Shown: positions 14,753 to 63,830 of the stretch, in pieces
Layout: each line of letters opens with the position of its first letter
How positions within the stretch are numbered: position 1 is the stretch's first letter
IMG/VR virus record: IMGVR_UViG_3300032214_000715
Location: 124,001 to 188,000 of that record
Length of the DNA stretch: 64,000 bases
Strand: one strand, 5' to 3'
Program-made: the position numbers and the translations under genes
Notes under the pieces: generated by a model
What the model saw: only the letters and a program-made list of their open reading frames with translations
Told to the model about the DNA's origin: nothing
The model's database searches: none

Positions 14753-16483
14753 TCAATAGTTCTGTCCTGCTACGAATCCTGACCAACTTGTCCCGCCATC
14801 ATATGTCATTATGGTAATGATATCGTATTTGTTAGCAGTTGCGGTTATTACTGGGGCCACTCCACTTGGCCATTTGATAGACGATGGCCACGCTAGTGAT
14901 CTTTCGCCAATAGCATCTTGTCTAATAATTAGTGCCAAGTAGAAAAGTCTACCACTGACTGGTACATTACTGAAAGTTAGACTGGTAATGTTTGAACTCA
15001 TTGTAATGACAAAATTATTTGACAGTGAACAATCAATATTGGTTGTTGCTGACGCTGTTACATTACTAGTAGACTCAGTATAAGCAGTTCCAAATGCTAA
15101 TGACGATGACAGGGTTACAGCGCTTGAAAATATTGTAGCGTTCGGTACTGTGCCGCCGGCAAAACCACCGCCTGCTACAACATCATCAACATATTTTTTT
15201 GTTGCTGCGTCTGTTTCTTGTGTAGGTGTAGCAAGACTTGTAATACGCTTACTAGAAACATCAACTGTTCCGGTTCCAATTGGCACTAAATTAACATTAG
15301 CATTAGATCCACCAGCAGTAAATGTTAGAGCTTCTGTTCCAGTAATACTACCGGTAGTAGTTCCAGTTCCACCATTTGCTACTACAAGAGTGCCCTCTAG
15401 TGTTATAGTTCCACTACTAGTTATTGGACTGTCTTTTACTGTTAATCCTGTAGTACCACCACTTAGTGCTACACTAGTAACGGTTCCAGTGGCAGCCGAT
15501 ATAGTTGTCCAAGTTGGTGCTCCACCGTTTCCGTTGCTGGTTAATACTTGACCCGTTGTGCCATAATTAGCGCCACTTAGACCCCACGCACCAGAGCTAA
15601 CTATACGCAGTCTCTCTGTTTGTGAACTGCCAGTCGTTACGATTACTGAACCAACTCCATCTGGTCCAACACCGCTCTGTAAATATACATTGCCACCAGT
15701 TCCGCTACCACCTGCTGCCCCCGGTCCCCCTCGTAGATATACATGACCTGGAAGACCTCCAATAATTGGAACTCCGCACGCTCCACCAATAATTAGTATA
15801 CTAGCTCCAGTAGCGGAGCCAGTCGCGGCGGCCGCAGCAGCAATAGTAAAAGTACTATCGGATGCTCCGACGCTAATAGTATTACTGCCATTATAGCTAA
15901 TTTGTGAGGTGGCAGAATACGCATTAGAACTCTTAAATATTAATTGTCCGTTACTTCCAGGAACTGCGGTTAATCCAGTACCACCATTAGCTATAGCTAA
16001 TGTCCCACCCAGAGTCAATGTTCCGGATGATGTTATTGGTCCTCCAGTAAGAGTTAATCCAGTAGTGCCTCCGCTACTGCTAATACTTGTTACTGTTCCA
16101 ACTGCTCCCGGAGCCCACGTTAATCCACTAGTGGAAGCTGAATCTGCCATCAACACTTGTCCATCAATGCCAACAGCTAATCTTATGTTGCTGGTACCAT
16201 TGTTGGCAATAATGTCTCCTTTAGTTGTGGCGGGAGATAACTCATTGAACGCAGCGGTTTTATTATTTTGACTGGTTCCCCCTTGAGCTACTGATAGTGG
16301 AGTTGTTAATCCGCTCAAGCTAGTAATGTCGCTATTAGCTCCGCTTTTCGCCGCTTCTAAATTACTACGAGAAATGCCAATGTCACTGTTCCCAGTGCCA
16401 CCTTGAGCAGTGGAAAGTATTCCTGTTATTTGTGCTGCTTGTATAGATTGTATTTGTGTTGACTGTATTTTATTTTGTGGCAT
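14753..16483 (-). CDS. Fibre protein (GGTG shaft repeats; C-terminal domain ending GFVAGQNY)
   Basis: Gly/Ser/Thr-rich, xxGGTG repeats, DAATKKYVD; C-terminal domain paralogous to that of 43363..46047. Confidence 0.8.
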   Translation of the reverse strand: MPQNKIQSTQIQSIQAAQITGILSTAQGGTGNSDIGISRSNLEAAKSGANSDITSLSGLTTPLSVAQGGTSQNNKTAAFNELSPATTKGDIIANNGTSNIRLAVGIDGQVLMADSASTSGLTWAPGAVGTVTSISSSGGTTGLTLTGGPITSSGTLTLGGTLAIANGGTGLTAVPGSNGQLIFKSSNAYSATSQISYNGSNTISVGASDSTFTIAAAAAATGSATGASILIIGGACGVPIIGGLPGHVYLRGGPGAAGGSGTGGNVYLQSGVGPDGVGSVIVTTGSSQTERLRIVSSGAWGLSGANYGTTGQVLTSNGNGGAPTWTTISAATGTVTSVALSGGTTGLTVKDSPITSSGTITLEGTLVVANGGTGTTTGSITGTEALTFTAGGSNANVNLVPIGTGTVDVSSKRITSLATPTQETDAATKKYVDDVVAGGGFAGGTVPNATIFSSAVTLSSSLAFGTAYTESTSNVTASATTNIDCSLSNNFVITMSSNITSLTFSNVPVSGRLFYLALIIRQDAIGERSLAWPSSIKWPSGVAPVITATANKYDIITIMTYDGGTSWSGFVAGQNY

Positions 16484-16491
16484 GTTCTTCC

Positions 16492-19400
16492 TTATACAAA
16501 GCTATATATTGTAATTTCGTCACTCGCTTGTAGTTCTTGATTAAAGGTTATTTCTTTTGTTCCAGTAACCATATAGGACTTAGTAGCTCCCTCTCGTTGT
16601 AATACACCATTTATGAAAACTTGAATATACACAGTGTCGTCGGTTTTTGCTACTGTTTTTACCGTAGTTGTTATCACTATTTGTCCAGCAGTAGCAGTTA
16701 TTTCTTGATATTTAGGCCCTGCTGATTTCCACTGTGGTGCTGCTCCTGTACCACTTGAAGTTAATACTTGACCAGCAGTACCTGATTGACCCTGAATATC
16801 CCACTGTCCACTGGAGTGTATTTTTAATTGACTATCAAAACCAGGAATATTGTCGTTAGTAAACGTTACTTCCTCGTCTTTTTGATAGTTTACTGTTTGC
16901 AAGTCTATTGATTTGCTTTTTATTACTAGATCAGTAGCATTATTACTTTCTATTGAATTTTCAATATCATCAAAAACTTTTTGATAACGAATACTTGAAA
17001 TGATAGTAGCTTCTTTAGTGGGCTGAATTTGTACGGAATACTCGTTATTCATTAGAATTTCGTTACCGTTATCATCGGGCTCTAGTCTGGTGTGTATTAC
17101 TTCTAAAGACGCTCTTGGATTTGAGTTATTACCAATCCAACCCTGATTTCCGGCTATTCTAAGTCCACCGTGAGGAAGAAAGTTATATTGATTTAAAAAT
17201 CGCAGTTCTTCTACATTTAATCTTTCAAGTTTACCAACCTGTTGAAGAGAACTGTGAGTTATCGTGCTTGGCAATGTAGATCCTACAAGCCCTCCAAGAT
17301 TTACACTTGGGAATTTCCAAAGAGCCGGCGTGTCAGCGCCACCGCTAGTAAGAACCATTCCTTCGGTCCCATATTCGCCGTTTATTCCTATTTTTCCGGA
17401 ATTATCTATTTCAACTATTTCTATTAGAGGGCTTGCTGGATCCTTTGCTGTTCTAAATATAATATTTCCGCCAGATCCAAGAGCTGAAGTGCCACCGTCA
17501 ATATAAACATTCCCACCAGTAGATTCTTCTCCCGACGCAGAACCTGCTTTTAAGAATATATCTGCTCCAAATCTATTTGAAAGATTACTCGCGCCTGATT
17601 GTAGTACTAAACTTACTGGCCCCGGTACATTGACTGATGTTTGCGTGATGGAAGTTCCATCAACGTTTGATGCTCCAAAAATAGTAAAGAAGTTGTTGTC
17701 GTCTTCATCACTCCAGGCACTACCTAATCTTAGAGCAGACTGAGCTACGTAGTTAATATCAGTGATTCCATCTATTACCCCATCTTTATTAAATAATAGA
17801 TTTTTATTTACACCCCGTGATATAACGGTAGTTGGATATATCCATTCTGCTGTTGAGCCGTCACTGACTAGGGATTTACCAGCAGTGCTACTGTCTTGAG
17901 TTGGTAGAAGTTTCTTAATTCCCGCTTCTGCCGTCGTCGCTCCTGTGCCACCGTGTTCTATTTTTAGAGTTCCCCCAAGCGTAAACGTTCCTCTATCAGT
18001 TATTGGTCCACCGAGCGTTGTAAGTCCTGTTGTCCCTCCACTCATCTCAACTGAGTTTACTGTTCCAACTACTCCGCCGGTAATTACACTAATAACCCCG
18101 TTATCGTCAGTTCTAGTAGTTATTCCGTCTGGCTTTACAAGTCCCAATCTACCTTCAGTAGCAGTTGGAACTAAACTATCACCTGATAGACTGGCCCAAA
18201 AAGCATTTGTTCCGTTACTTGCTAAAACATAGTTTTCTGCTAGCTCTTGATCTGGTAATAGATTAGTTAAAGCATCTACTTTGTTGGTTGCCGCTGTACC
18301 ACCGTACTCTATAGATAGAGTACCCCAATATGGAGTTGTATCCCCTCCGGCAGATAATAGAGGCTGTCCTGGCAATCCTATTTTTGGATCGCCTCCACCC
18401 TCTGAGTCCTGACCCATTTCTCCCAACTGCCACGCGCCAGTATTCCAGATGGTAAAGACTCTCTTAGCGTCTTCATATTTAGCGGTTTTAAATATTATCT
18501 GTCCGCCCTCTTGTTTATATGGGTTATTATTAGGGTCAAGTTCAGAACTTATATATCCCTCCCCGGCCTCAATATAAATATCTGCGCCTGGGCTCGATGG
18601 AGAAAAACCACCAGGAGATGGGGCGCCTGCGACCCCATCTCCCGCTTTTATAAATATGCTTCCAATCCCGATATCTTCAGGCTCCCACGTAGGTCTTTCA
18701 CGCCCACTGGCGTGACCTCCAACAATTGATATTGTTCCGGTGTGGTATCCATATCCCGGTCGTGAGCCTGAGTTAGATGTGTATATTCTAAGATTAGTCC
18801 ATGACTCGCTCGTAATTCCGAACTCATGCGTTACAGAATCGGTATTTCTAAAACGATCACCGAGTACTAAAGCACTATTGGGCACATATATGCGCGGGTC
18901 CAGTGATGGTTCATAACCGTTGTGTATATATTTAACTGTTCTAGCGTACTGTGTTTTTCGTGCGCCCCCGTCGGCATATATAAAAGAATTATAATCCTCT
19001 TGCTCTAGAGTATCAAGACTCAATGCTCTGGCACTAATTTGATCAGTGGCCGGGTCAATATACATAGAGTTAGAGTTCAAAGCAACTATACCCGGCTGAA
19101 TATAGTTAGCTATCGGTACAGGAGCACTTTCCCAAAAAAGATCGTATCCATTCCACAGCTCAGGTGTCGTCTCTTCATATGGTACATATCGATACTGTAG
19201 ATAATATGAATTACCGTCATTCGGGTGAGGTGGGAGCAAATTCCTTATATCAGTGCTTAATGTGCCATCATGTGCTACTTGTATTGTTGTTCCATCTGGT
19301 TTTACTACCCCAAGTCTATTAGTAGTGGCTATTTCTAACCCAGATGCCTGCACTGGCGCCCAACCAAGTTGTATTTTGCCGGAGTTATAATTGTATGTTA

Positions 19401-22400
19401 GATATTCACCGTGGCCTGACGTGGTGTTGCCCACCGGAAAAATTCCACCAATATCTACTTTTATTATTCCTTCTGTTTCAGTAATAATGGTTTCGCCGTC
19501 TAATCTAACTCCACCCAATTTACCTTCGGATCCAACTCCCGCTCTTGGAATGAATGCTTCCATCTCTGCCCAAAAAAGACTACCACCAGTGGTGCTTAAG
19601 ACTTTACCTTGATTTCCTTCTTGATTTGGAAAAAATTCATTGTAAAATAAATCACCGAAAAATTCATTGTTAAAGCCTAATTGCCCGTGAATATCCAGTA
19701 GTAGATGCTCTTGATTTATTTTAATGACACCAGGTCGTGAGGCCGCTCCGTATGTAGCTAGTGGAAGTTCTTCCCATCTAAGTGTTCCGGATTTTGTACC
19801 TTCTTCGGTAGAAACGCCGAATCCGTCAGTAGTTAAAAAGTGAAAATTTTTTCCTGATTGATCGGGAATTATTTGATTTCCAACATTTATAGTGTTTACC
19901 TTAATCATTCCACGACCCTCAGGGTCACGAAGAGTGTCATGATCAATCTCTGCTACTTTTGCCCTTAATGAAATACCCAATCCTGCCGGATGCCCGACCA
20001 GTTGTAGACCTCCGTATTGAACATCTCCTACCGGTGGGTGAATCAAAACCATTCCGCGTTTGCTATAACTAGCTATCATAGAATCCCACTTTGGAGATTG
20101 ACTTGTTCCTCTAGATATTAGTATATGATTTTGTTCACCAGTGTCAGTTTCTATCTTGTTAAAAGCCCAAGACCCCGACGAGTTTATTCTAAAAACTTCT
20201 TCCGACGGTTCCCCAGTACTAAAACTTATAAAGCCAGAATCTGCTAGTCCAAATCCACGACCTCCAGTTAAGTACAGATTCCCTGCCGGGGGAATAGTTA
20301 AACCCTCAATAGCGAATGAATCGCCGCCTTTTATTTCTACTGATGATCCTCCGTTAGTAATAGATTTTGCTTCTTGTCCTACTATTAAAAATAATTCGGA
20401 TAAGCCACTTCCGACTGTTAATTCTCCTCGACCGTCATATGATATGCGACTGGTACCACCTAAAAATCCTTCGTTATTGTACTGAAGCTGTCCGTTTAAT
20501 CCAACGGCGCCGGGCTTTGCTGTATCCCATCGTATGTTAGTGCCGTTTGTAGTAAGAACGAAATCTTTTTTGCCAGCTTGAGGAGGTAGAAATGAGTTTA
20601 TGGCAGCAGATGGGTCCGATGTTCCAGTTCCACCCTGTTCTATGCTTAATGGAGTTGTTAAACCACTAAGACTTGTGATATCACTATTTGCTCCGCTCTT
20701 TGCCGCCACCAAATTTATTCTGGCACTATCTGCTGTTGTCCCACCGGTGCCCCCAGCAAGAACAGGCAACACATCAGCCATTAATGTAAGCGCACTAGTA
20801 CTAAACAGTGCTCTATTTGGACCAATCAGAGTTGATAATCCAGTGCCGCCTTGATTTACACTAAGCGGTGTCGTCAGTCCACTCAAGCTAGTGATGTCGC
20901 TGTTATCACCACTTTTTGCTACTTCTAAATTAGCGCGAGCGCCCTCTGGTGTTTTACTACCAGTACCACCCTGATTTACACTAAGCGGAGTTGTTAGACC
21001 ACTTAAGCTAGTGATGTCACTGTTATCTCCGCTTTTTGCTGCGCCTAAGTTTGCCCTTGCGCCTGTCGGCGTTTTACTACCAGTGCCGCCTTGATCAACG
21101 CTAAGCGGTGTCGTCAGTCCACTCAAGCTAGTGATGTCACTGTTATCTCCGCTTTTTGCTGCTCCTAAGTTTGTTCTTGCGACAGAGGGCGTAGAAGCGT
21201 TGGTTCCTCCCTGCGCGATAGTAAGAGGAGTAGTCAGTGCTGATAATCTTGTAATATCATTGTTTACTCCACTCTTAGCCACTTCTAATTCTATTCTAGC
21301 TAGTGCTGGAGTTGACGCATTAGTTCCGCCCTGCGCCACACTAAGTGGAGTTGTTAATCCACTTAAGCTAGTAATGTCACTGTTATCACCACTTTTTGCT
21401 GCTTTCAAGGACTCTCTGGCTTCAGCCGCGTTTGTTGATCCAGTGCCGCCATTATTAACAGATAATACTCCGCCAAGAGTTATGATCCCGATTCCACCAT
21501 TTGCTCCCGTTACTGGTCCGCCAGTGGTAGTTAACCCAGTTGTGCCACCGTTAACATTTACGCTTTTTACAGAGGTCGCTAGTGGCTCTACCCAAGATAA
21601 TATTCCCCCGCCATCGGTAGTAAGAACTTTATTTTCGTTGCCAGTTTGATCGGGCAACATAGCAGTAATAGTTGAACTTAGATTATCGTAACCAGTGCCG
21701 CCAAATTGCGGTGATAGCACTTGAGTCAATCCAGAACTTTTTCCAGAAATGTCACCCGTTATACTTGCTCCACTTATAGCTGCTATAGTTGATAGTGCGT
21801 TCCCGTCGGATACAACAAATCCAGAGTCAAAACTGGTTCTTCCAGTTCCGCCCTTTGATATCGGCACAGTATTTAAACTAAGAGTAATAGTTCCTGATCT
21901 TGTTATTGGGTTAGTGCCTCCTACAGTTAAATCAGTAGAGGTTATGGTGACTGAATTTACTGAACCATACTGTGGAATATTAAGAACGTTATTATCAAAC
22001 GTAGCAGCACCACTGGTGCCAACAGTCTGTAGCGTGACTACACCCTGATACACGGGAATATTTAATACATTGTTCGTGAATGTAGCTGATCCTGTTACAT
22101 CATTCGTGGTTAAACTTACAGGCAGTTGATAATCAATATTGGGTTCCGCAGTTTGTAGACCGCCATTAACTCCCTTAGTTATTCCATTGATGTATGTGCC
22201 AATTGTTATGCTAGGGTAAGTACTTGCGGAAGACACTTCTCCAGTAAATCCATTGGATGAGTTAACCGAAACTGATTTAACTGTGCCTACTATACCGTCG
22301 GTAGTAACACTTATTCGTCCGGTTTGATTGACTACTATAGTACTATTGTCAACAGTGACTGAACCCAGTACCGACATAGTTGCTACTCTAGAGCTTACTG

Positions 22401-23211: not shown

Positions 23212-23263
23212 TTGATATCCTTAATGTTTAGTAGTATTTATTCTTACTGTGTCAGTAAAGATA

Positions 23264-29488: not shown

Positions 29489-29497
29489 AATTTATTC

Positions 29498-48439: not shown

Positions 48440-48458
48440 GATCAATATCTCACTACAA

Positions 48459-49958: not shown

Positions 49959-50009
49959 AATATTATTTTCCTAACTTGTGTTTAAAAGATGTTGATGATA
50001 TTTATGAAA

Positions 50010-50042
50010 AAAATAGAGAAATTTATTAAATTTCTCTATTTT
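50010..50042. terminator. AT-rich hairpin / terminator
   Basis: AAAATAGAGAAATTT-ATT-AAATTTCTCTATTTT. Confidence 0.7.
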
Positions 50043-50074
50043 GTACAGTACATTACTACATTGTAAGCACTGAA

Positions 50075-51841: not shown

Positions 51842-51914
51842 GAATAATCTCCTTAATTTAGTCTAGCAAAGTTGCTAGATAGTCTATAGTCCTAGATATA
51901 TTTATCCAATCAAG

Positions 51915-51947
51915 AAAAAAGAGAGAATTAATTTCTTAATTCTCTCT
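51915..51947 (-). terminator. AT-rich hairpin / terminator
   Basis: AGAGAGAATTAA-TTTC-TTAATTCTCTCT next to an A-run (T-run on the minus strand). Confidence 0.7.
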
Positions 51948-51969
51948 CGTTCTATTCACTCACGAGTGA

Positions 51970-53796: not shown

Positions 53797-53865
53797 TTTG
53801 TTTTTCTCCTAGGTTAAAGTGTATTATGTATCTTAGTATGGGTACTACGAAAGTACTCATACATA

Positions 53866-53873
53866 TATTTATA
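53866..53873 (-). promoter_or_regulatory. T4-type late promoter, full consensus TATAAATA
   Basis: Exact T4 gp55-dependent consensus, followed by a 5' leader hairpin (53836-53862). Confidence 0.8.
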
Positions 53874-53910
53874 CAAGACGTTTATTTTTTGAATAAAAAC
53901 TTGTATTTCC

Positions 53911-54372
53911 TTAAAATGCGCCGCCGTCTAACTCAGAAGACGCATCCCATTTTCCAGTAACACTATTGTACTTCAATAGTGCGTCCTGAGCAATTGGGTC
54001 GGCGGCATTTACATCTCCTATGTCTGATAATTTATCAATCTTTGCGCTGACGGTAAATTTAGTCCAATTTTCTTCCGCATTTGGCATTTCACCCGTGATG
54101 GAATCACGACTTTGCCCTGAAAGAAGAGAGTATTTATAGTATGAATCACCAGTTCTGGTGAACCCGCCCGCAGTGTATTCAGTTTTTACATAGACCAACA
54201 TACCCTCAGTTAATCGTTGACCTGTGATATTGGTTAATCTATTTCCAAATGATCCAGTGACGCTTTGTAACGAGCCACGAATTTCCGTATCCAGTACGAT
54301 TGGATGATTGCCAGTAGGGCTCCAAGTACCAGTCCAAGTGTTTCTTGTTAAACCATCGTAATTTGTGCTCAT
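53911..54372 (-). CDS. Small fibre adaptor protein ending LDGGAF
   Basis: ATGA-coupled to the upstream gene; RLTEGMLVYV and LSDIGDV...LKY...W motifs. Confidence 0.75.
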   Translation of the reverse strand: MSTNYDGLTRNTWTGTWSPTGNHPIVLDTEIRGSLQSVTGSFGNRLTNITGQRLTEGMLVYVKTEYTAGGFTRTGDSYYKYSLLSGQSRDSITGEMPNAEENWTKFTVSAKIDKLSDIGDVNAADPIAQDALLKYNSVTGKWDASSELDGGAF

Positions 54373-57300: not shown

Positions 57301-57569
57301 GTTCCGCCTACTGTAAATGTGCCAGAAGTCGTTATTGGGTTTCCGTCTCCAGTAGTAAAGGTTAGTCCGGTACCACCCGGATCAATATTTACAGACTTTA
57401 CCGAACCAAAATCAGGGTTAGCGTTAAAATATTTAATAGTAGAGGTGCCGTCTTTATAAAACAGACGACCGTCAGCATAGTTAATCGCAATTTCACCAAA
57501 CGATAAGTCAGATATTAATGGACTTGTTCCAGTCGTACCCGAATTTTTAATAATAATCGTTGTTGCCAT
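54369..57569 (-). CDS. Fibre protein (1066 aa) with Mtd_N-like N-terminus
   Basis: TIIIKNS...FGEIAINYADGRLFY; DAATKQYVD...GDRILLKNQ; repeated W..I...P..VS.F.ND units. Confidence 0.8.
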   Translation of the reverse strand: MATTIIIKNSGTTGTSPLISDLSFGEIAINYADGRLFYKDGTSTIKYFNANPDFGSVKSVNIDPGGTGLTFTTGDGNPITTSGTFTVGGTLGVFNGGTGASNPTDAINNLLPSQASFSGRVLSTDGTNIVWKAFSGSDVISGLGYTPVNRAGDTMQGTLTLHADPVSALDAATKQYVDNLASGLNVHLACAVASTANLNGTYNNGSNGIGATLTGVGQLTQLDGHTLIVGDRILLKNQTDKKQNGIYVLSANNPNWVLMRATDFDNSFAGEVSAGDFTFIQNGTTLAGTQWIMITPGTISLGTSAIEWSQFGSVGNYIAGNGISIVENTISNTGVLSATAGQNISITGSTGNITVGFSGVLPVESGGTGAETPAAARAALLPSQNGNANKVLITDGSDVSWSNTTPIAVATSTILGGVKIGDNVTVAEDGTISVAAPFGGNYTDLTNAPTKVSDFTNDVGFVKFSELAWSSISGTPTGLSYFQNDINYALKTDITWENVINRPTNVSEFTNDAQYVTQSNFTWENLNGTVPDVGIFGNAAGYITTTSLTWNNITDKPDFATVATTGSLDDLVNVDLTTVPPTDGQLLGYNSVMDKWIPVDDAAGIPGGTDGQLQYNNNGSFAGVSGVTATADKVAFESTDNISIGGGTSGQVLSTDGAGNVSWTSISEQSGPLVFTTSGSYRTLTGYQENGSTSPVRVAEFFGNKLRLTLATFTPTISATISPASPSWDQPITSFAVSVVNPDDITDQYISAVRSITATSGSISALNTFSAGVQSATPAGTVDWTQTFTTDADSFIRPTSTTIAGGNAAGTIAFNFYNGTSTAEYMTSTASISVNWATPTLGVALSSLTGNTFLQSYNSVAYTVTVTGMSSTSNYANSVTAVGGTTSSATASGTFTFTDPIHKNNTATTRTVSVSTTFTRPASVTGTSYTANLSATTASASATFTYPSFWLFTTATSVPPTASNIVNETAFAAGVTALGSQVKVFAGNVNNTESTPRAFWFAVRTSASQPTSFKTGPTSSLLSDVSVTTGNTVSLQPTTPPAGYVAEGYTLYGITLQPGTTYVSIS

Positions 57570-57583
57570 TTATTTTTCCTTGT

Positions 57584-58552
57584 TTAACCGAAACTTCCGC
57601 CGTTTATTATGCCTACTAAATTGTCAACGTAATACTTGTTAACTAGATCGTTATCAGCTAGACCTTGTGAGTACAGTTGAGCAGTGGGGCCTTGTACTGT
57701 AACTTTATTAGCATTATTGTTGGGTAGTATCATTGTAGTGTCTCCTGACTGAGACTCCAAAAATAAATTAGATGTTCTGGCGCGCAGTGTTAGAGTTTCA
57801 CCTGAATTAGTCTGTATTACTGAATTTCCAGTTCCAGTTACAACTACACTTCCACTTCCATTTGGTAACAACACTAGATCAGAATTAGTTGCCGTGGCAG
57901 AAATACTTGAGTTGGCACCGTTTATTACAACTGGATAAGCTGATCCAACGCTCAGTGTGCTTTGTGTGTTATCAAAACTAAGTTTATCCGATTGAGCTAC
58001 TGCGTCTGTGCCGTTTCCGTACAGTATTTGATTTGGCATTAACTCAGTGAGTCCAGTACCGCCGCTACTTACTGGTACTGTATCAAGTGATATAGTAAGC
58101 GTGTCGCCGTTTAACTCAACCGTAATCGGGCTATCGCCAGTAGTAGTTACTGTTTTTCCAACAACCTTCCAGGCAGCTCCGTCATAGTATTCCGCTACAG
58201 GGCTGGATCCGCTAGTGTTAATTCTCAACATTCCAACTGTCGGGGACTCTGGTCGTTCTTCAGTAGTACCAACTGGTATACTTACGGCTGAGGTTCCATC
58301 AAATTTAACGACACCCTGTTGTTGTAAACTAACTGTAGTTCCAGCAAAGCTTAATTTCCCAGTGTCGGAAGATATATTTACGTCGGTGTCTAATGCGGTA
58401 ATAGACGAAGCCACCATTGGAATATGGGTGGATTCGTTTGTTGCTCTTACGCTAAAGGAATTAGTAATTACATCGTAATAAACTACGCCGCCATTTTTCC
58501 CGTACTGTACCGAGTTTGATGTTCCTGCTAATCCGTAATTTTTTGTAACCAT
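57584..58552 (-). CDS. Fibre/connector protein ending INGGSFG
   Basis: IPVGTTEERP...GMLRIN...EYYDG.W; C-terminal region paralogous to the end of 50075..51841; TATAAATA at 58572-58579. Confidence 0.75.
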   Translation of the reverse strand: MVTKNYGLAGTSNSVQYGKNGGVVYYDVITNSFSVRATNESTHIPMVASSITALDTDVNISSDTGKLSFAGTTVSLQQQGVVKFDGTSAVSIPVGTTEERPESPTVGMLRINTSGSSPVAEYYDGAAWKVVGKTVTTTGDSPITVELNGDTLTISLDTVPVSSGGTGLTELMPNQILYGNGTDAVAQSDKLSFDNTQSTLSVGSAYPVVINGANSSISATATNSDLVLLPNGSGSVVVTGTGNSVIQTNSGETLTLRARTSNLFLESQSGDTTMILPNNNANKVTVQGPTAQLYSQGLADNDLVNKYYVDNLVGIINGGSFG

Positions 58553-58591
58553 ATTTAATTCCTAACTTAAATATTTATATCACGATCATCA

Positions 58592-60634
58592 TCAAACATA
58601 TGTGATGATTATAGTGGCCGCACCTTGAGTTGATCCACCATCATTAAAAGTACCAGTTACTGTTACATCTCCATCAACATTAACTCCTGGTGTGCCACCA
58701 ACTCCAAATTTAAGCCCAGTATCAGCGGTGTATATACCAACGGCATTTAAGTTGTTTAGATTTATCGCCATTAGTCCATTGATGGAAGTCACTGGAGTTT
58801 CTGAATTATTGATTAAGTAACCAAGCGCAAGTGTGGCCAATCCGTTAAATGGAACAGACACATTTACTGCTACCGATGCTATTCTGCGACCAGTTGTTAG
58901 TGTTCCAATATTAAATTCAAGCGGAGAATTATTGGTTAATGTGTAGGATAGTGTCTTGCTGTCTACACTTGCTGAACTTTGTCTAGCAATTAAGACCCAA
59001 TCAGATCCGTCCCACAACCAATTACTCCATTGATTTACATAATTATTATTTCCATCATTGCTGTCAATTACATAGGCTTGATCTCCTATTAATGGAGTAA
59101 GTGAGTCTCTGAAGGCCAAGTCAGTTACTACCATTGCGCCTGCTTGACGCACTCCGCCCTGTATATAAAGACCAGCGGCCTTTGTTCCATTTTCAACACT
59201 TACTAAACCAAAGTCTAGAGTGACACTTCCCTGTACATCTAAGAAATTAATTGCTCTGGCATCAATGGCAGTAAATTTGACAATATTCTGTGTAGATGCT
59301 GAAGTACTTAACGAGATACCAGATCCTGAGTTTGGTCCAGCAAAGGGAACACCATTGGTATCACTGTTAACATTACTAATAGTAATTATTCCGCCGCTGT
59401 CATTAATAATTTTCAATCCTGTTCCAGAGTTTATTACCTCGGCAGATATATTGGGTATGTTCGCATTGTTAATATCCTTTGCCATTTGCGTTGGTAGTGA
59501 GTAATCTTCGTATCCAGGAACAGATGATCTGCTAGAAAACGTCACCAATACTCCATTTATGCTGGCGCTGACCGGATTAGAGGCGGCGAATAGCGCAGGC
59601 TCACCATAGATTGTTGATATATTAGATGATATCGTTTGCGCCGATGATGGACTTAAACTTAGCTCCGCATTTACTCCAGTGTCTTCAGTCGCCGAGTTAA
59701 TAGCAGATACTAAATCCTCTGCGGACCCAGTTCCACCAACAGTGATATTTACTGAATTCAGAGAAATTATACTTCCAGAAGTTGTCGGGCCAGTAGAAGT
59801 CCCAGACACCTTAGATACGGTCTGATTTCTTAATTTAATGTAGATAGGAGACCCGGCTGAATCCAACGATAGTTCCCCTGGAACATCAGTTGAACTGTAT
59901 ATTTGATCGCCTACGTCACCTGGAAGAGAGTCTAGAAAATCAACTATCTTGTTGATGGGATTTATAGTAAACCATCCAGGGATAGCATCAGACACAGACG
60001 TTACTCGTCCAATTACAATTTTATAAAATTCATCGGCTAATACATATCTATGTGTTTCGTTATCTACGGCTATGACATCATTGATAGCAAACGTATTGTC
60101 TGCTTGATATAGTGCGTAATCGTACTGTAGATTATTGTACGTAAATCTACTAATTAAATTTTGAGTGAAGTTAGAAGAAATTCCTGATGGGGGAACTGGG
60201 TCTATTTGCGGTATTCCGTCTCCACTTAGATTAAAAATGACATATACACCGAGACTTAGACCACCATTTCCAACTTGAGAGGTATCTCTAAAGGTATTGT
60301 ATCTATAAATATCCTGAACAGTGGCAACTACGCTATTTGCTGATTTGGACTCTATGGATATTATTTGCCACGCTTGCCCAGTAGTGGCGTTGGCAATCCA
60401 CTGCCCTATAGTTACATCATATCCATTATACAATCCGGGATTTCTAGTCAGATAAGAGCTTTGATTTTGAGATGCCACTGACATCTCAATTTTCCAGCGA
60501 TATGCTTTTGCCGACGGCGCTGGAGAGCCCGTAGATGGGAAATTTAAAGGATTGTACCAGGGTAAAAACTCTGTGCCCAATACGCTAGTAACGTTAGCCT
60601 CTAATGTTTTTACGGGTTTATTTAAAAATGACAT
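58592..60634 (-). CDS. Virion structural protein (680 aa), possible fibre anchor
   Basis: Non-repetitive beta-rich ORF inside the late fibre cluster; GAGG RBS. Confidence 0.7.
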   Translation of the reverse strand: MSFLNKPVKTLEANVTSVLGTEFLPWYNPLNFPSTGSPAPSAKAYRWKIEMSVASQNQSSYLTRNPGLYNGYDVTIGQWIANATTGQAWQIISIESKSANSVVATVQDIYRYNTFRDTSQVGNGGLSLGVYVIFNLSGDGIPQIDPVPPSGISSNFTQNLISRFTYNNLQYDYALYQADNTFAINDVIAVDNETHRYVLADEFYKIVIGRVTSVSDAIPGWFTINPINKIVDFLDSLPGDVGDQIYSSTDVPGELSLDSAGSPIYIKLRNQTVSKVSGTSTGPTTSGSIISLNSVNITVGGTGSAEDLVSAINSATEDTGVNAELSLSPSSAQTISSNISTIYGEPALFAASNPVSASINGVLVTFSSRSSVPGYEDYSLPTQMAKDINNANIPNISAEVINSGTGLKIINDSGGIITISNVNSDTNGVPFAGPNSGSGISLSTSASTQNIVKFTAIDARAINFLDVQGSVTLDFGLVSVENGTKAAGLYIQGGVRQAGAMVVTDLAFRDSLTPLIGDQAYVIDSNDGNNNYVNQWSNWLWDGSDWVLIARQSSASVDSKTLSYTLTNNSPLEFNIGTLTTGRRIASVAVNVSVPFNGLATLALGYLINNSETPVTSINGLMAINLNNLNAVGIYTADTGLKFGVGGTPGVNVDGDVTVTGTFNDGGSTQGAATIIITYV

Positions 60635-60653
60635 TTATCTGCCCTCGGATGCG

Positions 60654-63600
60654 TTAGAATCCAAATACAACGACCAAATGCGCTCGTTGTCCTAAACCTG
60701 CGGATGCTCCAGCATCACTCATTCTAGTTTGTAGAGTTATTGTGCTATTAAATACACTAGAGGCAATATTAGAGACGAACGCCGGATTTGCTAAGTCAGT
60801 TCCTCCGTCCAAGCTGGCTTGACCTAAACTAGTAATATCTCTTACGGCAAATCTCTGTGCGCTACCGTTAGCGGCACAAATTTGTCCGTACACAGTTATT
60901 GACTTTGGAGGATTAGTTTTTCCTGTAAATGCGTAATTTACGATTGCGTTTGCTCCATCCGAAATAGTAGCTGATACTCCAGATGTTTGAGATACCTTTG
61001 AATCGGAGCCAGATAAATTTCCACCGCTTCCAGTGGTGTATTTAAATACTACTATTTCTGGAGAACTAGTTCCGCCACCTCCGCCACCTGAACTAGCAAT
61101 AGTAATAGTATTAGCGTCAGTTCTAGTAATCGTAACATTAGATCCAGCAGCTAAAGTAACATTATCGGTAGAAGAATCGCTACCTGTAAGTCTTAAATTA
61201 GCACCGCCTGTTACTGTTTCTGCACTAATACTATAGGTTGTTCCTGCGCCACCGCCACCTGAATATTGTGGAATGTTCAATGTGCCATTTGTAAACGTAG
61301 CAGCCCCGCTAGTTCCAGTTGTTGTTAGAGTAATTGGTGCTTGATAATCTGTTCCAGCGGAAGCAGCTACAAACCCACTTCCGTTTCCTTTTAATAGACC
61401 GTTTAGTGTAGTAGTTACCGCTAGTGTTCCAGATGCTGTTACTGGACTTCCGGTTACCGTAAATCCAGTTGGCATTGTCAGTCCTACACTTGTTACTGTT
61501 CCAGAACCACCTCCACTTCCACCAGAAGCAGCAATAGTAATTTCGTTAGCTGCGGATCCCGTACCTTTAGTTAAAGTAACATTAGTTCCAGCTACTAGCG
61601 TAACAGATGTAGTTCCAGTTCCACTTCCTCCGGCAGTTAATGTAATATTTTTCTTTGTAGCTTGTCCAGATACATCTGCTGCGCTTATGCTGTATGTAGT
61701 ATCTGTGTTTGCTACTACATCAGTAAGCTTTGCTATGGCATTCCAAGCTCCGCCCTGAGCAAAGTAGGGTCTTGTATCAGCATTACTAACTGCTAGAGCG
61801 CCTTGATAAGTAGTGGCATTAGGAAAAGCAGCTTGATTTGTAAAATAGAAAGGAATAACACTGCCCACCGCCGGAGCTGTAATTAGTCCAGTGTCGGAAA
61901 TTGTTACTAAGCTGTTTTGAATTAGCTTGCCTGTGTTGGAGTCAAATCTAGCAATAGCGTTGTCAGTAGCGGACGCTGGTCCAACTACATCTCCGCTTCC
62001 TCCTCCGCTAGAAACAGTTGCCCATTCTAGACCGCTAGCTGCGGAATTCACACGCAATACTTGAAGAGCAGTTCCTATACTTGTTAAACCTGTGCCGCCG
62101 GCGGTTGTTGGAACAGTAGACTGTGTAAATCCAAGTGTTACAGCACCATTAGTTGTGGAAGCAGTAACTCCACCGCCACCAGTTACACTTAGTACTCCAG
62201 TATTAGCAATAGCATTGTTAGTTATTGATATACCAGTGCCGGCGGTCAATGAATTGGGTCCACCAAACTGCGTGAATACAATGTTTGTAGTCCCGAGAGT
62301 TATTGTGCCCGAGGTAGTCATTACCCACTGAGTGGTGGCAAGTGTTCCTTCACCAACGAAAAATGCGTCTCCGGAATTAATATTTGATGAACTATTAAAA
62401 TCACTTACTCTAGTCAACACAAACGGATTTAACGTAGTAAGCTCATACATACCATTTTGCGTTTGTGTTGTCTGATTTTTAACTAATATACGATCACCTA
62501 GCGATAAAGTTACTCCATTTATTGACCCTAATGATCCAGATCCAGTTAACGTAGCTCCAGTTCCTGCTGTACCATTGTTGTATGTAGCAGTGATATTAGA
62601 TGCAGTAGCGGTACGAGCTGACTCTTTTACTACTAATCCAGACGCTAAATTGTCCACGTATTGTTTAGTTGCGGCGTGAAGAGCAGTTGTGGGATTGCCA
62701 CTAAGAGACAGCGCTCCAGTCATAGTACCGCCAGCAAGAGGAACAAATCCGACAGCACTGATAACGTCATTGTCAATAGTAATAGTTGTGCCGTCTACTT
62801 TTACTCCACCGCGGACCGTAGTAGACGCTGCTGGTAAAGTGTAACTACTACCCCCAGTAGAATCGGTGCCGTTTACCCAATTAGTACCATTATACTTTAG
62901 CACTTCTCCAGTGGTTGGAGTGGTAATAACTACGTCCGTTAGATCATCTAAATTAGTGGCGCCACCACCGCCACCACCACTCACAGCGCTTATTATTCCG
63001 TCTTCTATGGTAATTGTTGTTCCGTCTATCTTTACTAAACCCAAGACATTTACTGAAGCAGTGGGTATAGCTGCGTATTCTAGTGCGGTTCCAAGAGAGT
63101 TTACTTTTAGATAGCTGTTTGCTTCACCCTTAGAACTTAAACCAGTTCCGCCGTTATCGATGTCTAATGTTCCCGCTAGAGTAAATGTACCAGAGCTGGT
63201 TATAGGATTTTCAGAGGAAGAACTAACGGTTAGTCCAGTATTGCCAGTAGAAAAACCAATACTAGTTACAGTTCCAGTACCAGATGTGTTACCCCAGCTT
63301 AACTTGCCAGACCCGTCTGTAATCAACACTTGTCCAGTAGATCCGCCGCCTATGCTAAGTTTGTTTACATCGGTAAATGTGGCGCCCTGAGCTACTTCTA
63401 TGGAATCAACTGATAGTATCTTGGTATTGGGATTGAAGGAAAATGAGCTTACTCCGTCCAAATCACCGCCGTTGTTAAACTGAACTTGATAGTTAGAACC
63501 ACCGGGCTCATCGACATACACAAATTGCTGTACAGTGCTTTGATCTATTCCGGTAACGTATATATCTTTGTCCGTGTTTATAACACTAACGGCATCTGCG

Positions 63601-63830
63601 CCGGCAAACAATAGCGTATTGTTGGTGGCGTTGTTAAATGTTATTCTGCCATCAGTTAAAGAAGGTTGACGAGAAACTGATGTAATAGAACTTGAAGTAG
63701 TATTTCCAATAGCATCTACTTGTGTTATATTTGTTGCTATCGGTGGACCACTTAGGGCTGTTGATACAGTCTGCGCTACTACAGGATCGTCTCCTGAAAT
63801 TATCGTTGCTGAGGGTGTTTTGATTGCCAT
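60654..63830 (-). CDS. Mosaic fibre protein (1058 aa)
   Basis: LDDLTDV...LKYNG..W, HAATKQYVD...GDRILVKNQ, GTVTS and poly-Gly linkers; CTAAATA at 63877-63883. Confidence 0.8.
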   Translation of the reverse strand: MAIKTPSATIISGDDPVVAQTVSTALSGPPIATNITQVDAIGNTTSSSITSVSRQPSLTDGRITFNNATNNTLLFAGADAVSVINTDKDIYVTGIDQSTVQQFVYVDEPGGSNYQVQFNNGGDLDGVSSFSFNPNTKILSVDSIEVAQGATFTDVNKLSIGGGSTGQVLITDGSGKLSWGNTSGTGTVTSIGFSTGNTGLTVSSSSENPITSSGTFTLAGTLDIDNGGTGLSSKGEANSYLKVNSLGTALEYAAIPTASVNVLGLVKIDGTTITIEDGIISAVSGGGGGGATNLDDLTDVVITTPTTGEVLKYNGTNWVNGTDSTGGSSYTLPAASTTVRGGVKVDGTTITIDNDVISAVGFVPLAGGTMTGALSLSGNPTTALHAATKQYVDNLASGLVVKESARTATASNITATYNNGTAGTGATLTGSGSLGSINGVTLSLGDRILVKNQTTQTQNGMYELTTLNPFVLTRVSDFNSSSNINSGDAFFVGEGTLATTQWVMTTSGTITLGTTNIVFTQFGGPNSLTAGTGISITNNAIANTGVLSVTGGGGVTASTTNGAVTLGFTQSTVPTTAGGTGLTSIGTALQVLRVNSAASGLEWATVSSGGGSGDVVGPASATDNAIARFDSNTGKLIQNSLVTISDTGLITAPAVGSVIPFYFTNQAAFPNATTYQGALAVSNADTRPYFAQGGAWNAIAKLTDVVANTDTTYSISAADVSGQATKKNITLTAGGSGTGTTSVTLVAGTNVTLTKGTGSAANEITIAASGGSGGGSGTVTSVGLTMPTGFTVTGSPVTASGTLAVTTTLNGLLKGNGSGFVAASAGTDYQAPITLTTTGTSGAATFTNGTLNIPQYSGGGGAGTTYSISAETVTGGANLRLTGSDSSTDNVTLAAGSNVTITRTDANTITIASSGGGGGGTSSPEIVVFKYTTGSGGNLSGSDSKVSQTSGVSATISDGANAIVNYAFTGKTNPPKSITVYGQICAANGSAQRFAVRDITSLGQASLDGGTDLANPAFVSNIASSVFNSTITLQTRMSDAGASAGLGQRAHLVVVFGF

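What the first reader, a model, noticed from the sequence alone, without database searches (positions are those of the whole stretch)
14753..63830. ~49 kb uninterrupted cluster of 17 fibre/adhesin genes built from a shared module kit
Seen in sequence: three quarters of the window encodes only Gly/Ser/Thr-rich fibre-like and LamG/PKD proteins, with no chaperone or enzyme genes recognised in between. A few modules recur in different orders: GTVTSV..SGGTTGLT..GPIT.SGT.TL.GTL..NGGTG; LP.Q....K.L.T.G...SW; LP.A....LGGVK; RI...GAW.....GT.GQVLTS.G....P.W; and AATKQYVDNLASGL...GDR.L.KNQ (in 32039, 54369 and 60654). This far exceeds the T4 gp34-38 fibre set. Inference: an elaborate branched or hairy virion surface, possibly for host capture in dilute water, evolving by module shuffling.
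Basis: partly seen in the sequence, partly recalled or inferred. Interest (0 to 1): 0.7.

Follow-up and report, generated by a model that had tools for sequence, protein, structure and literature searches.

The report
Giant modular fibre-gene island, jumbo phage
An uncultivated freshwater jumbo phage devotes 49 kb to 17 back-to-back genes for virion fibres and lectin-like adhesins assembled from reusable protein modules, an unusually large version of a locus whose products are proven virion proteins in a cultured relative.

Summary

The window comes from a 239-kb IMG/VR contig (CheckV 68% complete) of a T4-like jumbo myovirus found in freshwater and river metagenomes.

- Eight genes share fibre modules in differing order and copy number.
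- Four are LamG/PKD arrays.
- F11, F12 and F15 form their own family.
- F13 and F16 share nothing. F16 is a conserved core protein.

Modules match solved tail fibres (LME-1, E 7e-21; 7z47). F09 is predicted to be a full-length homotrimer (0.85 against control 0.00). F07 contains a tailspike-like beta-helix, so an enzyme-like domain is present.

The locus is syntenic with the Clp-protease to DNA-polymerase block of Pseudomonas phage PA5oct, where ten proteins, including the F16 homologue, were found in virions by mass spectrometry.

Module turnover is seen directly. F07 relatives carry 0, 1 or 2 copies of module M4, and one natural strain has an in-frame 193-codon loss. Single LamG units pair across genes out of register.

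A complete relative has its own, mostly unrelated, ~50-kb fibre island at another locus.

The hairy or branched virion remains an untested inference. This is a new variant of a known kind.

The parts
60654..63830 (-). F17, 1058 aa fibre protein. Modules M2-M1-M3-M3-M5...M1. The C-terminal ~135 aa are conserved next to F16 homologues in other phages. First gene of the cluster.
   Evidence: C-terminus 924-1058 is 55% identical to the protein upstream of the F16 homologue in L116.
58592..60634 (-). F16, 680 aa conserved core structural protein. It shares no modules with the rest. The middle domain is FliD/flagellin D2-D3-like and the C-terminal domain is a jelly roll.
   Evidence: Collinear family at 52-59% identity on many 180-390 kb contigs. 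33% identical over its full length to PA5oct EST35_0303, annotated 'structural protein, ESI-MS/MS'. AF2 pLDDT 83. Fold matches.
57584..58552 (-). F15, 322 aa. Its N- and C-terminal parts are conserved downstream of F16 homologues. It shares 175 aa with F11.
54369..57569 (-). F14, 1066 aa fibre. Modules NT-M1-M2-M5-M2-M3...M2.
   Evidence: The M5 module (aa 157-380) matches the solved LME-1 tail fibre 9efk_AE at E 7e-21.
53911..54372 (-). F13, 153 aa. It overlaps the F14 stop by 4 nt. It belongs to a family of small phage proteins whose conserved N-terminal domain is fused to collagen repeats in some members. Probably a short fibre or adaptor, not a recognised chaperone.
51970..53796 (-). F12, 608 aa. 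Paralogue of F11 (65% identity over 446 aa).
50075..51841 (-). F11, 588 aa. Paralogue of F12. PHROG matches to structural and tail fibre families.
48459..49958 (-). F10, 499 aa. Three PKD domains plus one LamG. This LamG is the closest relative of the third LamG of F03.
   Evidence: support 100/99.
47327..48316 (-). F09, 329 aa short fibre. Modules NT-M1-R40 plus a C-terminal domain. Predicted to be a full-length homotrimer.
   Evidence: complex prediction score 0.85 against best control 0.00.
46061..47293 (-). F08, 410 aa fibre. Modules R40-M4-M1-M2. Its M4 is 75% identical to the M4 of F01.
43363..46047 (-). F07, 894 aa tailspike-like fibre. Modules NT(Mtd_N)-M1-M2-M2-beta-helix-M4-M1-CT. 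A natural strain variant lacks aa ~504-701 (M4 plus the second M1).
   Evidence: Pfam Mtd_N. AF2 beta-helix over aa 160-420 with pLDDT above 90. Foldseek matches to phage 7-7-1 tail fibres, pectin methylesterases and tailspikes. Strain deletion.
38032..43308 (-). F06, 1758 aa. Eight LamG_3 repeats.
   Evidence: Pfam E 8.6e-145..
32039..37966 (-). F05, 1975 aa giant fibre containing M2, M3, M4, M1 and M5 modules, with several copies of M2, M3 and M4.
29498..31978 (-). F04, 826 aa. Three LamG repeats plus a C-terminal domain shared with F03. A low-GC island (30-32%).
23264..29488 (-). F03, 2074 aa. Seven LamG repeats plus a glycine-rich C-terminal region (Gly_rich_2).
   Evidence: Pfam E 1.1e-116..
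16492..23211 (-). F02, 2239 aa giant fibre. Seven M3 (LGGVK) repeats, six R40 repeats (a 120-nt tandem array at about 20610-21423), three M4 modules, and M1 and M2 units.
   Evidence: The R40 region matches solved tail fibres 7z47_D (E 1e-11) and 8vbx_R.
14753..16483 (-). F01, 576 aa fibre. Modules R40-M1-M4-M1-CT. The C-terminal ~105 aa tip domain is of the phrog_9017 'tail fiber' type. Last gene of the cluster.
63927..63952 (-). Strong terminator-like hairpin followed by a T-run, just upstream of F17. It marks the upstream boundary of the cluster.

Best explanation
The region is a greatly expanded late-gene locus for virion surface proteins in an uncultivated freshwater T4-like jumbo myovirus. 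Its nearest cultured relatives are the PA5oct and Atu_ph07 group.

Its products fall into three classes:
- Long homotrimeric fibres strung together from short, reusable shaft modules. These are R40, M1, M2, M3 (LGGVK), M4 and M5, ending in different tips. One tip is a shared ~105-aa 'tail fiber' domain. One fibre has an embedded tailspike-type beta-helix.
- Bead-on-a-string arrays of LamG and PKD lectin-like domains, which probably bind carbohydrate.
- A conserved trio (the F17 C-terminus, F16 and F15) that is inherited vertically and probably anchors the variable proteins to the particle.

Together they would give the virion many receptor-binding appendages of different reach and specificity for adsorption.

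The locus diversifies by four routes: tandem amplification of modules, gain or loss of whole modules, exchange of single modules between paralogues, and occasional whole-gene duplication or horizontal acquisition.

Shown: gene layout, module homology, module turnover, fold assignments, synteny with a proteomically verified locus, and freshwater origin.

Inferred: virion incorporation here, where on the particle the proteins sit (tail or head), carbohydrate binding, and the adsorption function.
For: Phage context:
- gp15 tail-sheath stabiliser, td and frd lie in the window.
- Tail sheath, TerL, UvsX, gp32 and clamp loader lie nearby in the genome.
- The record is an IMG/VR virus record.

Fibre nature:
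- PHROG matches to tail fibre, baseplate wedge and virion structural families.
- tblastn hits to annotated tail fibres of roseophages, kuraviruses, Melnitz and others.
- M5 matches the solved LME-1 tail fibre at E 7e-21. That fibre forms six trimers on the tail (PMC12407071).
- The R40 region matches solved tail fibres 7z47_D and 8vbx_R.
- The F09 homotrimer scores 0.85 against a best control of 0.00. In calibration 21 of 30 true homo-pairs and 0 of 23 single chains reached the mark. Runs agree on at least 95% of contacts and pLDDT is 93.

Adhesin domains: LamG_3 at E 1e-116 and 1e-145, and PKD at E 2e-40.

Beta-helix: F07 model with pLDDT above 90 over aa 160-420. It matches phage 7-7-1 tail fibres, pectin methylesterases and tailspikes.

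Virion incorporation by homology and synteny:
- The PA5oct block from ClpA protease to DNA polymerase holds ten ESI-MS/MS-confirmed virion proteins.
- These include the F16 homologue (33% over full length), an F15/M5-like protein and a LamG 'putative adhesin', in the same order as here (PMC7318152).

Modular evolution: and the strain deletion.

Late expression hint: an ATAAATAC motif lies within 60 nt upstream of a same-strand ORF in 18 of its 30 genome occurrences, including F02, F04, F05 and F08.
Against: - There is no proteome, image or transcriptome for this phage. Virion incorporation is proven only for distant homologues (33% identity) in PA5oct.
- Baseplate genes are not adjacent, and the contig is only about 68% complete. 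Attachment sites are therefore unknown.
- Some evidence points to the head rather than the tail. The F16 C-terminal jelly roll resembles capsid cement proteins at Z about 10. M3 matches the phi29 head-fibre family. M5 matches families labelled 'head decoration' in PHROGs.
- The F07 beta-helix matches are modest (E 3e-5) and its catalytic residues were not examined.
- Monomer AF2 confidence for the shaft modules is low.
- The complex predictor was calibrated on dimers, not trimers.
Confidence: 0.75

Rival explanations
1. Head fibres or capsid decoration. Much of the cluster would encode capsid-anchored whiskers rather than tail fibres. F16 would act as a cement-like anchor on the capsid lattice, and the fibres would project from the head, as reported for Atu_ph07 and Tenacibaculum phages PTm1 and PTm5.
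For: - F16 C-terminal jelly roll (aa 556-680) matches cyanophage Pam1 capsid protein 7eel_H at Z 10.1, KHP40 cement protein at Z 10.0 and GP4 capsid 8h89_J at Z 8.8.
- M3 LGGVK repeats match the Pfam Phage_head_fibr family and PHROG head-fibre families.
- M5 matches phrog_2647 'head decoration' and the cyanophage PSS2 'capsid decoration protein'.
- Atu_ph07 whiskers are 'primarily capsid-associated' (PMC6102473). The jumbo-phage review cites PTm1/PTm5 head fibres.
Against: - Z of about 10 on a jelly roll is only slightly above the typical background best hit of 7-8. Carbohydrate-binding modules and other jelly rolls score 6-7 in the same list.
- The only solved structures matched by sequence are tail fibres.
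- The N-termini of F07, F09 and F14 match Mtd_N and T4 long-tail-fibre distal-subunit families.
- The tip domain of F01 and F07 is of a 'tail fiber' family.
- PHROG labels such as 'head decoration' are untested annotations.
Confidence: 0.25
2. A phiKp24/RaK2-type hyperbranched tree of depolymerase tailspikes. Each gene would be an alternative enzymatic receptor-binding protein for a different capsule type, giving a broad host range.
For: - The number of genes is similar to the 14 fibres of phiKp24 (PMC9700779).
- F07, and X18 outside the window, have a pectin-lyase-fold beta-helix.
- The group is related to RaK2-like phages through PA5oct (bioRxiv 10.1101/406421 abstract).
Against: - Only one of the 17 genes, plus one outside the window, has a beta-helix.
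- No Pfam or PHROG depolymerase, lyase or hydrolase family was hit by any of the 17 proteins.
- Most of the mass is shaft modules and LamG/PKD binding domains, not enzymes.
Confidence: 0.1
3. The proteins are not virion components. They could be secreted or cell-surface adhesins, or infection-time proteins that remodel the host surface. Alternatively, the cluster could be an assembly chimera created by repeats.
For: - No direct proteome exists for this phage.
- LamG, PKD and glycine-rich repeats also occur in bacterial surface proteins.
- The cluster is not next to baseplate genes.
Against: - The orthologous PA5oct locus is confirmed in virions by mass spectrometry.
- All modules have their best matches in phage fibre families.
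- Identical sequence is found on a 153-kb UViG, on a 341-kb contig and on a 40.9-kb run contig.
- Related strains occur in independent river and aquatic samples with the same gene order F07-F08-F09.
- Internal DNA repeats are at most 89% identical.
- A relative, G007, keeps the same F01-F02-F03 order.
Confidence: 0.05

Closest known systems
Pseudomonas phage PA5oct structural block EST35_0299-0310 (Arenbergviridae), between the ClpA-like protease and DNA polymerase
   Same: Same flanking protease gene. Same order of F17-like fibre, F16 homologue (33% identity over full length), F15/M5-like protein and a LamG 'putative adhesin'. In PA5oct these products are in the virion by ESI-MS/MS (PMC7318152).
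   Different: The PA5oct block is about 20 kb with about 12 genes. Here it is 49 kb with 17 genes. Apart from F16, homology is weak (E 1e-4 to 1e-11). PA5oct lacks the R40, M1, M4 and CT modules and the 7-8-repeat LamG giants. DNA polymerase is not the downstream neighbour here.
Klebsiella jumbo phage phiKp24 (14 hyperbranched tail fibres) and RaK2-like phages
   Same: A jumbo myovirus with a large clustered set of fibre genes. N-terminal structural parts are followed by variable distal parts (PMC9700779).
   Different: The phiKp24 fibres are nearly all beta-helical depolymerases. Here only F07 has a beta-helix, and the rest are shaft modules and lectin-like arrays. No sequence similarity to those fibres turned up. 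Branching is not shown here.
'Hairy' jumbo myoviruses: Atu_ph07 (capsid whiskers), CBB and Y3 (tail hairs), PTm1 and PTm5 (head fibres)
   Same: Atu_ph07 is the best cultured match for gp15 (35.6% identity). It also has structural homologues of F16 (E 1e-21). It shows many unannotated virion proteins and whisker-like appendages.
   Different: The genes for those hairs have not been assigned. No collinear fibre cluster was compared. The relationship is distant.
T4 long and short tail fibre genes (gp34-38, gp12, wac)
   Same: Late genes for trimeric fibres in a T4-like myovirus. The N-termini of F07, F09 and F14 hit PHROG families annotated as long tail fibre distal subunit.
   Different: About five times more coding capacity here. 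No gp38- or gp57-type chaperone was found. The architecture is modular and repeated, and LamG/PKD arrays are absent from T4 fibres (T4 details from general knowledge).
Solved podovirus fibres: Legionella phage LME-1 tail fibre (9efk) and 'putative tail fiber' 7z47_D
   Same: Direct sequence homology of module M5 (E 7e-21) and of the R40 repeats (E 1e-11) to parts of these solved trimeric fibres.
   Different: Only single modules are shared. The phages are unrelated small podoviruses with one fibre gene.

Membership tests
Phage trimeric tail-fibre proteins | Sequence homology to experimentally solved tail-fibre segments | tested here: met
   M5 of F14 against LME-1 tail fibre 9efk_AE, E 7e-21. 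R40 region of F02 against 7z47_D, E 1e-11, and 8vbx_R gp47, E 1e-8. The CT tip had no PDB hit.
Phage trimeric tail-fibre proteins | Homotrimeric, intertwined along the length | tested here: met
   F09 in three copies scored 0.85 against a best control of 0.00. Contacts run from residue 3 to 329, the runs agree on at least 95% of contacts, and pLDDT is 93. This is a prediction only and was tested for one of the 17 proteins.
Phage trimeric tail-fibre proteins | Present in the virion and attached to baseplate, tail or neck | not testable with these tools
   The phage is uncultivated. Support is indirect only, from the MS-verified PA5oct homologues and synteny.
Tailspike or depolymerase (pectin-lyase-fold beta-helix) | Right-handed parallel beta-helix domain | tested here: met
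   F07 aa 160-420 has pLDDT above 90. Foldseek hits are 9rkv tail fibres at E 3e-5, pectin methylesterases, pectate lyase, and the K2-2, HK620 and CBA120 tailspikes, at probability 0.99-1.0.
Tailspike or depolymerase (pectin-lyase-fold beta-helix) | Catalytic residues and polysaccharide-degrading activity | not tested
   No active-site comparison was made. No Pfam enzyme family was hit.
LamG / concanavalin-A-like lectin repeat proteins | Pfam Laminin_G_3 above the gathering threshold, in repeats | tested here: met
   F03 386 bits (7 stretches), F06 478 bits (8), F04 136 bits (3), F10 62 bits (1). The cut-off is 27.6 bits.
DGR-diversified Mtd-type receptor-binding protein | Reverse transcriptase and template/variable repeat pair; C-type-lectin variable region | tested here: not met
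   F07 has Mtd_N only. There is no RVT_1 match in the 239-kb record. No repeat pair in the cluster exceeds 89% identity. Caveat: the record is about 68% complete.
Tail-fibre assembly chaperones (gp38, Tfa, gp57 or intramolecular S74) | A recognisable chaperone gene or domain next to fibre genes | tested here: not met
   No such Pfam or PHROG hit for any of the 17 proteins. The only small gene, F13, belongs to a family whose members may carry collagen repeats. It resembles small Mtd_N-type fibre proteins in the atlas.
PA5oct-type virion structural locus | Synteny: Clp/Lon-like protease, small conserved ORF, fibre, F16 homologue, F15/M5-like protein, LamG adhesin | tested here: met
   The same core order is seen in the metagenomic contig L116.
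phiKp24/RaK2 hyperbranched depolymerase fibre system | Most fibres carry beta-helical depolymerase domains; hierarchical docking domains | tested here: not met
   The beta-helix HMM hits only F07 and X18. No depolymerase families were found. Docking was not tested.
Capsid cement or decoration proteins | Jelly-roll trimer bound to the capsid lattice | tested here: inconclusive
   F16 aa 556-680 against 7eel_H at Z 10.1 and 7dou_4 at Z 10.0. The fold is common and the score is only modestly above background.

The most novel reading that the evidence does not exclude
A large, uncultivated clade of freshwater jumbo phages has more than 585 IMG/VR relatives of its gp15. Each lineage in it may maintain a ~50-kb, one-strand 'fibre island' with largely lineage-specific content. 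The island would sit at different genomic loci in different lineages: next to the protease and MoxR genes here, and next to nrdAB in the complete 360-kb relative G002. It would be built from Lego-like trimeric shaft modules whose copy number tunes fibre length, as seen in the 0, 1 or 2 copies of M4 among orthologues. If these proteins all decorate one particle, the virion would carry a multi-tiered forest of appendages beyond anything imaged so far. That would be a distinct adsorption strategy for sparse hosts.
Probability: 0.3. Interest if true: 0.7.

Novelty: new variant of a known kind. Interest (0 to 1): 0.55.

Why it matters
Receptor-binding appendages decide which bacteria a phage can kill. 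Jumbo phages with many fibres (phiKp24, RaK2) are the known extreme, and those use enzyme-tipped spikes.

This locus shows a different, mostly non-enzymatic solution on an even larger scale. About 20% of the recovered contig is spent on modular fibres and lectin arrays. The same scale, though not the same genes, is seen in a complete relative.

Because module gain and loss can be seen between natural strains, the clade is a tractable natural system for studying how fibre length and tip specificity evolve.

The short, self-contained modules could also be useful parts for engineering fibres. M4, for example, is present in 0, 1 or 2 copies in otherwise orthologous fibres.

The finding also assigns a probable structural role to the conserved F16 family. 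That family is widespread in jumbo-phage metagenomes and is unannotated in every source checked.

Tried and rejected
- Megablast of the flank against GenBank phages found no match. There is no close cultured relative.
- A search with F05 in five large relatives found almost nothing. The fibre content is lineage-specific, so module-order comparison had to rely on G007, on metagenomic homologues and on strain contigs.
- DGR hypothesis, raised by the Mtd_N hit. No reverse transcriptase was found and there are no near-identical repeat pairs. Rejected, with the caveat that the contig is incomplete.
- T4 late promoter TATAAATA is not enriched in the window: 6 found against 6.95 expected. The variant ATAAATAC is positionally enriched instead.
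- Sigma-70 promoter scan gave no more hits than shuffled sequence.
- Moraphage lineage paper (PMC12619734). From its abstract, those phages lack much of the machinery of other large phages. This phage carries T4-type replication genes, so I did not treat it as the same group. I made no direct comparison.
- F13 as a tail-fibre chaperone. There are no chaperone family hits, and relatives are fused to collagen repeats. Rejected in favour of a short fibre or adaptor.
- F02 strain comparison. Contigs were fragmentary and 90-95% identical, with unaligned patches. A possible skip of 624 nt across the 120-nt repeat array is not a multiple of the repeat and could not be resolved, so I did not use it.
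- No tRNA genes in the window.
- The C-terminal tip domain of F01 had no PDB sequence match, so its fold remains unassigned.


Full report
**Origin.** The window is bases 124001-188000 of a single 239,163-bp IMG/VR virus record. The record is linear and CheckV estimates it to be 68% complete.
- An identical 153-kb UViG exists.
- Identical F07 and F16 proteins also lie on a 341,154-bp contig, so the true genome is probably at least 341 kb.
- The left quarter of the window encodes a T4-type tail-sheath stabiliser gp15, thymidylate synthase with an adjacent GIY-YIG homing endonuclease, DHFR, and a MoxR-AAA/VWA pair.
- Tail sheath, TerL, UvsX, gp32, clamp loader and primase-helicase lie elsewhere on the contig.
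- The best cultured matches of gp15 are jumbo phages Atu_ph07 (35.6%), Phosso, the PA5oct group and SCTP-2.
- More than 585 IMG/VR stretches encode gp15 relatives, and the 79 best after the identical copy are 62-79% identical. They include complete 349-367 kb genomes.
- Public runs holding near-identical DNA are labelled aquatic, riverine, freshwater, aquaculture and wastewater metagenomes.
- This is therefore an uncultivated freshwater jumbo myovirus.

**Checking the observation.**
- All 17 ORFs are at the stated coordinates on the minus strand.
- Intergenic gaps run from -4 to 142 nt, and 98% of the 49,078 nt are coding.
- Gly+Ser+Thr is 30-47% in all genes but F04, against about 12-23% in neighbouring genes.
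- Paralogous segments align with E-values down to 1e-166.
- DNA-level repeats are old, at 60-89% identity. This argues against assembly collapse and against very recent duplication. The exception is the 120-nt R40 array in F02, whose protein copies are up to 90% identical.

**Anatomy.** I built HMMs from seed copies and mapped non-overlapping modules.
- Fibre kit:
  - R40, a 40-aa repeat (...SGxNSDITSLSGLTTPLSVxQGGTG).
  - M1 (GTVTSV...NGGTG).
  - M2 (LPxQ...W).
  - M3, a roughly 33-aa LGGVK repeat.
  - M4, a roughly 160-aa glycine-rich unit ending in GQVLTS.
  - M5, a roughly 220-aa AATKxYVD unit.
  - An Mtd_N-like N-terminus (NT), a beta-helix (BH) and a roughly 105-aa tip domain (CT).
- Example architectures:
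  - F01: R40-M1-M4-M1-CT.
  - F07: NT-M1-M2-M2-BH-M4-M1-CT.
  - F08: R40-M4-M1-M2.
  - F09: NT-M1-R40 plus a C-terminal domain.
  - F14: NT-M1-M2-M5-M2-M3.
  - F02 and F05 are 2,000-aa concatenations of many units.
- LamG kit: F03 (7 LamG plus a glycine-rich C-terminus), F04 (3), F06 (8) and F10 (3 PKD plus 1 LamG).
- F11 and F12 are 65% identical paralogues, and F15 shares 175 aa with F11.
- F13 and F16 share nothing with the others.
- Three more kit-bearing genes lie outside the window (X18, X19 and X20).

**What the modules are.**
- PHROGs assigns the modules to tail fibre, tail protein, baseplate wedge, virion structural, head fibre and head decoration families.
- tblastn finds the modules singly in annotated tail fibres of roseophages, Microcystis and Limnohabitans phages, kuraviruses and Melnitz.
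- By sequence, M5 matches residues 232-434 of the solved LME-1 tail fibre at E 7e-21. That protein forms six trimers on the tail.
- The R40 region matches the solved 'putative tail fiber' 7z47_D and gp47 of 8vbx.
- Three copies of F09 are predicted to intertwine along the whole chain. The score is 0.85 against a best control of 0.00. In calibration 21 of 30 true pairs and 0 of 23 single chains reached the mark, although that calibration used dimers. Run agreement is at least 95% and pLDDT is 93.
- F07 modelled with 31 homologues gives a confident right-handed beta-helix over aa 160-420. Its best fold matches are the phage 7-7-1 tail fibres, pectin methylesterases, pectate lyase and several tailspikes.
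Its activity is untested.

**The conserved core and the virion link.**
- F16 belongs to a strictly collinear family of about 677 aa at 52-59% identity, present on many 180-390 kb contigs.
- In one such contig (L116) the locus reads: Clp/Lon-like protease, LamG protein, small fibres, a 538-aa protein whose C-terminus equals the F17 C-terminus (55%), the F16 homologue, a 1025-aa protein with F15-like ends and an M5 middle, then DNA polymerase. The fibre part is about 11 kb.
- In cultured phage PA5oct the same block lies between the ClpA-like protease and DNA polymerase. It contains the F16 homologue (33% over full length, E 1e-98), an F15/M5-like protein and a LamG 'putative adhesin'.
- Ten proteins of that block carry the GenBank note ESI-MS/MS, meaning they were detected in virions (PMC7318152 reports 93 virion-associated proteins).
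The proteins of the orthologous locus are in virions, although here that rests on homology and synteny.
- The F16 model (pLDDT 83) has a middle domain like FliD/flagellin D2-D3 (Z about 9). Its C-terminal jelly roll has best matches to capsid cement and decoration proteins (Z about 10).
- It also has structural homologues in Atu_ph07 (E 1e-21).
- That similarity, together with the head-fibre and head-decoration labels of M3 and M5, keeps a head-fibre reading alive. I rate it lower than a tail location or a mixed one, because the sequence matches to solved structures are all tail fibres.

**How it evolves.**
- Nearest-paralogue analysis shows mosaics. The R40 of F01 is closest to that of F09 (72%). 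Its M4 is closest to that of F08 (75%). Its second M1 and its CT are closest to those of F07 (64% and 54%).
- A maximum-likelihood tree of the 20 LamG units groups F03 unit 3 with the single unit of F10 (support 100/99). It groups F03 unit 6 with F06 unit 8 (99/95). Both pairings are out of register.
- Units 1 and 2 of F03 and F06 pair in register with weaker support.
- The history therefore combines whole-gene duplication with later single-module exchange.
- Orthologues differ by whole modules:
  - F07 has one M4.
  - A 65%-identical homologue has one M4 but only one M2.
  - A 60%-identical homologue has M4-M4.
  - A 99%-identical natural variant (700 aa) has no M4.
- That last variant is seen directly in two independent studies. 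Contigs are about 97% identical across F07(N)-F08-F09, with a 590-nt skip and 11 replacement nucleotides, a net loss of 579 nt or 193 codons in frame.
- Downstream of the skip, the F07 tip region is only about 84% identical.
- The closest syntenic relative (G007, gp15 72%) keeps the order F01-F02-F03. Its F01 reads R40-M1-M4-M4-CT, and its F03-like gene is rearranged.
- F04 sits in a sharp 30-32% GC trough between sequence of 41-48% GC. This suggests horizontal acquisition.

**Clade context.**
- In three complete relatives and one 74%-complete relative, the site next to MoxR/VWA holds only two or three small GST-rich ORFs.
- I reassembled the complete 359,563-bp relative G002 from fetched pieces. 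It has its own one-strand run of 16 GST-rich ORFs at 37,644-87,292, about 50 kb, beside nrdAB. That run shares only LamG and an M5-like stretch with this cluster and has no F16.
- Conversely, this phage has only two GST-rich ORFs (536 and 2,178 aa) beside nrdA.
- GST-rich ORFs of at least 250 aa total 21,183 aa here, in 239 kb, and 25,257 aa in G002, in 360 kb.
- Very large fibre islands are therefore a property of the clade. Their position and content are not conserved.

**Comparison and verdict.**
- The locus works like the multi-fibre adsorption apparatus of jumbo myoviruses, and it is orthologous in layout to the PA5oct structural block.
- It differs from the phiKp24/RaK2 model in being mostly non-enzymatic.
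- It differs from T4 in scale, in modularity and in lacking recognisable fibre chaperones.
- A DGR mechanism was tested and not found.
- The hairy or branched morphology is plausible by analogy (Atu_ph07 whiskers; review) but is not demonstrated.
- I classify it as a new variant of a known kind, of moderate to good interest. The interest comes mainly from its scale, from the directly observed module turnover, and from the clade-wide but non-homologous fibre islands.

Noticed in passing
window 43944-44535 (F07 aa ~504-701): Contigs from two independent studies (runs X2 and X3) carry a strain about 97% identical across F07(N)-F08-F09. It has this 590-nt segment replaced by 11 nt, an in-frame loss of 193 codons covering modules M4 and M1. 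The F07 tip (43365-43944) is only about 84% identical. The matching 700-aa protein P0002 exists in the protein database.
   Followed up: yes
window 29498-31978 (F04): A sharp low-GC island of 30-32%, against 41-48% in F05 next door. The boundary is abrupt at the F04/F05 intergenic region. F04 is also Asn-rich and not GST-rich. This suggests recent horizontal acquisition of a LamG gene.
   Followed up: partly
window 23241, 31992, 37997, 47322 and genome-wide: The motif ATAAATAC, often as CATAAATACTA, resembles the T4 late promoter TATAAATA. It lies within 60 nt upstream of a same-strand ORF start in 18 of its 30 genome occurrences, including F02, F04, F05 and F08. It is a candidate late promoter.
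   Followed up: partly
window 7398-9121: A GIY-YIG/NUMOD3 homing endonuclease gene (7398-8225) overlaps the end of the thymidylate synthase gene (8222-9121) by 4 nt. DHFR follows at 9131-9595.
   Followed up: no
L095 6817-10737 (genome 94817-98737): The ribonucleotide reductase large subunit is split into two ORFs of 317 aa (N-terminal part) and 611 aa (C-terminal part). A 371-aa ORF with no PHROG match lies between them. This could be an intron, an intein or a homing-element insertion.
   Followed up: no
L097 14485-19119 (genome 202485-207119, X19): A 1544-aa fibre-like gene outside the window has two arrays of M3 (LGGVK) repeats. Copies are 97-100% identical at protein level, so these are very recent tandem amplifications. 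PHROG matches are to head-fibre families.
   Followed up: partly
window 11261-13891: A MoxR-type AAA ATPase (12641-13891) and a VWA/DUF2201 metallopeptidase-like protein (11261-12547) lie immediately downstream of the fibre cluster. The pair is conserved (69-75% identity) in relatives. MoxR/VWA pairs are chaperone-like, so a role in assembling the fibres is conceivable but untested.
   Followed up: no
G002 37644-87292 (loci L101-L104): The complete 360-kb relative has its own ~50-kb one-strand run of 16 GST-rich ORFs beside nrdAB. It is almost unrelated in sequence to the window's cluster and includes several 288-466 aa proteins with 51-59% Gly+Ser+Thr.
   Followed up: partly
window 58592-60634 (F16): The F16 family has no name in any source checked, yet it is conserved at 52-59% identity across many jumbo-phage contigs. 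It has homologues in PA5oct (in the virion by mass spectrometry), SCTP-2, Atu_ph07 and Phosso. Its middle domain resembles flagellar cap and flagellin outer domains.
   Followed up: yes
window 63927-63952: An 11-bp-stem GC-rich hairpin followed by a T-run lies on the minus strand, directly upstream of the first cluster gene. It probably terminates the preceding conserved 297-aa gene.
   Followed up: no
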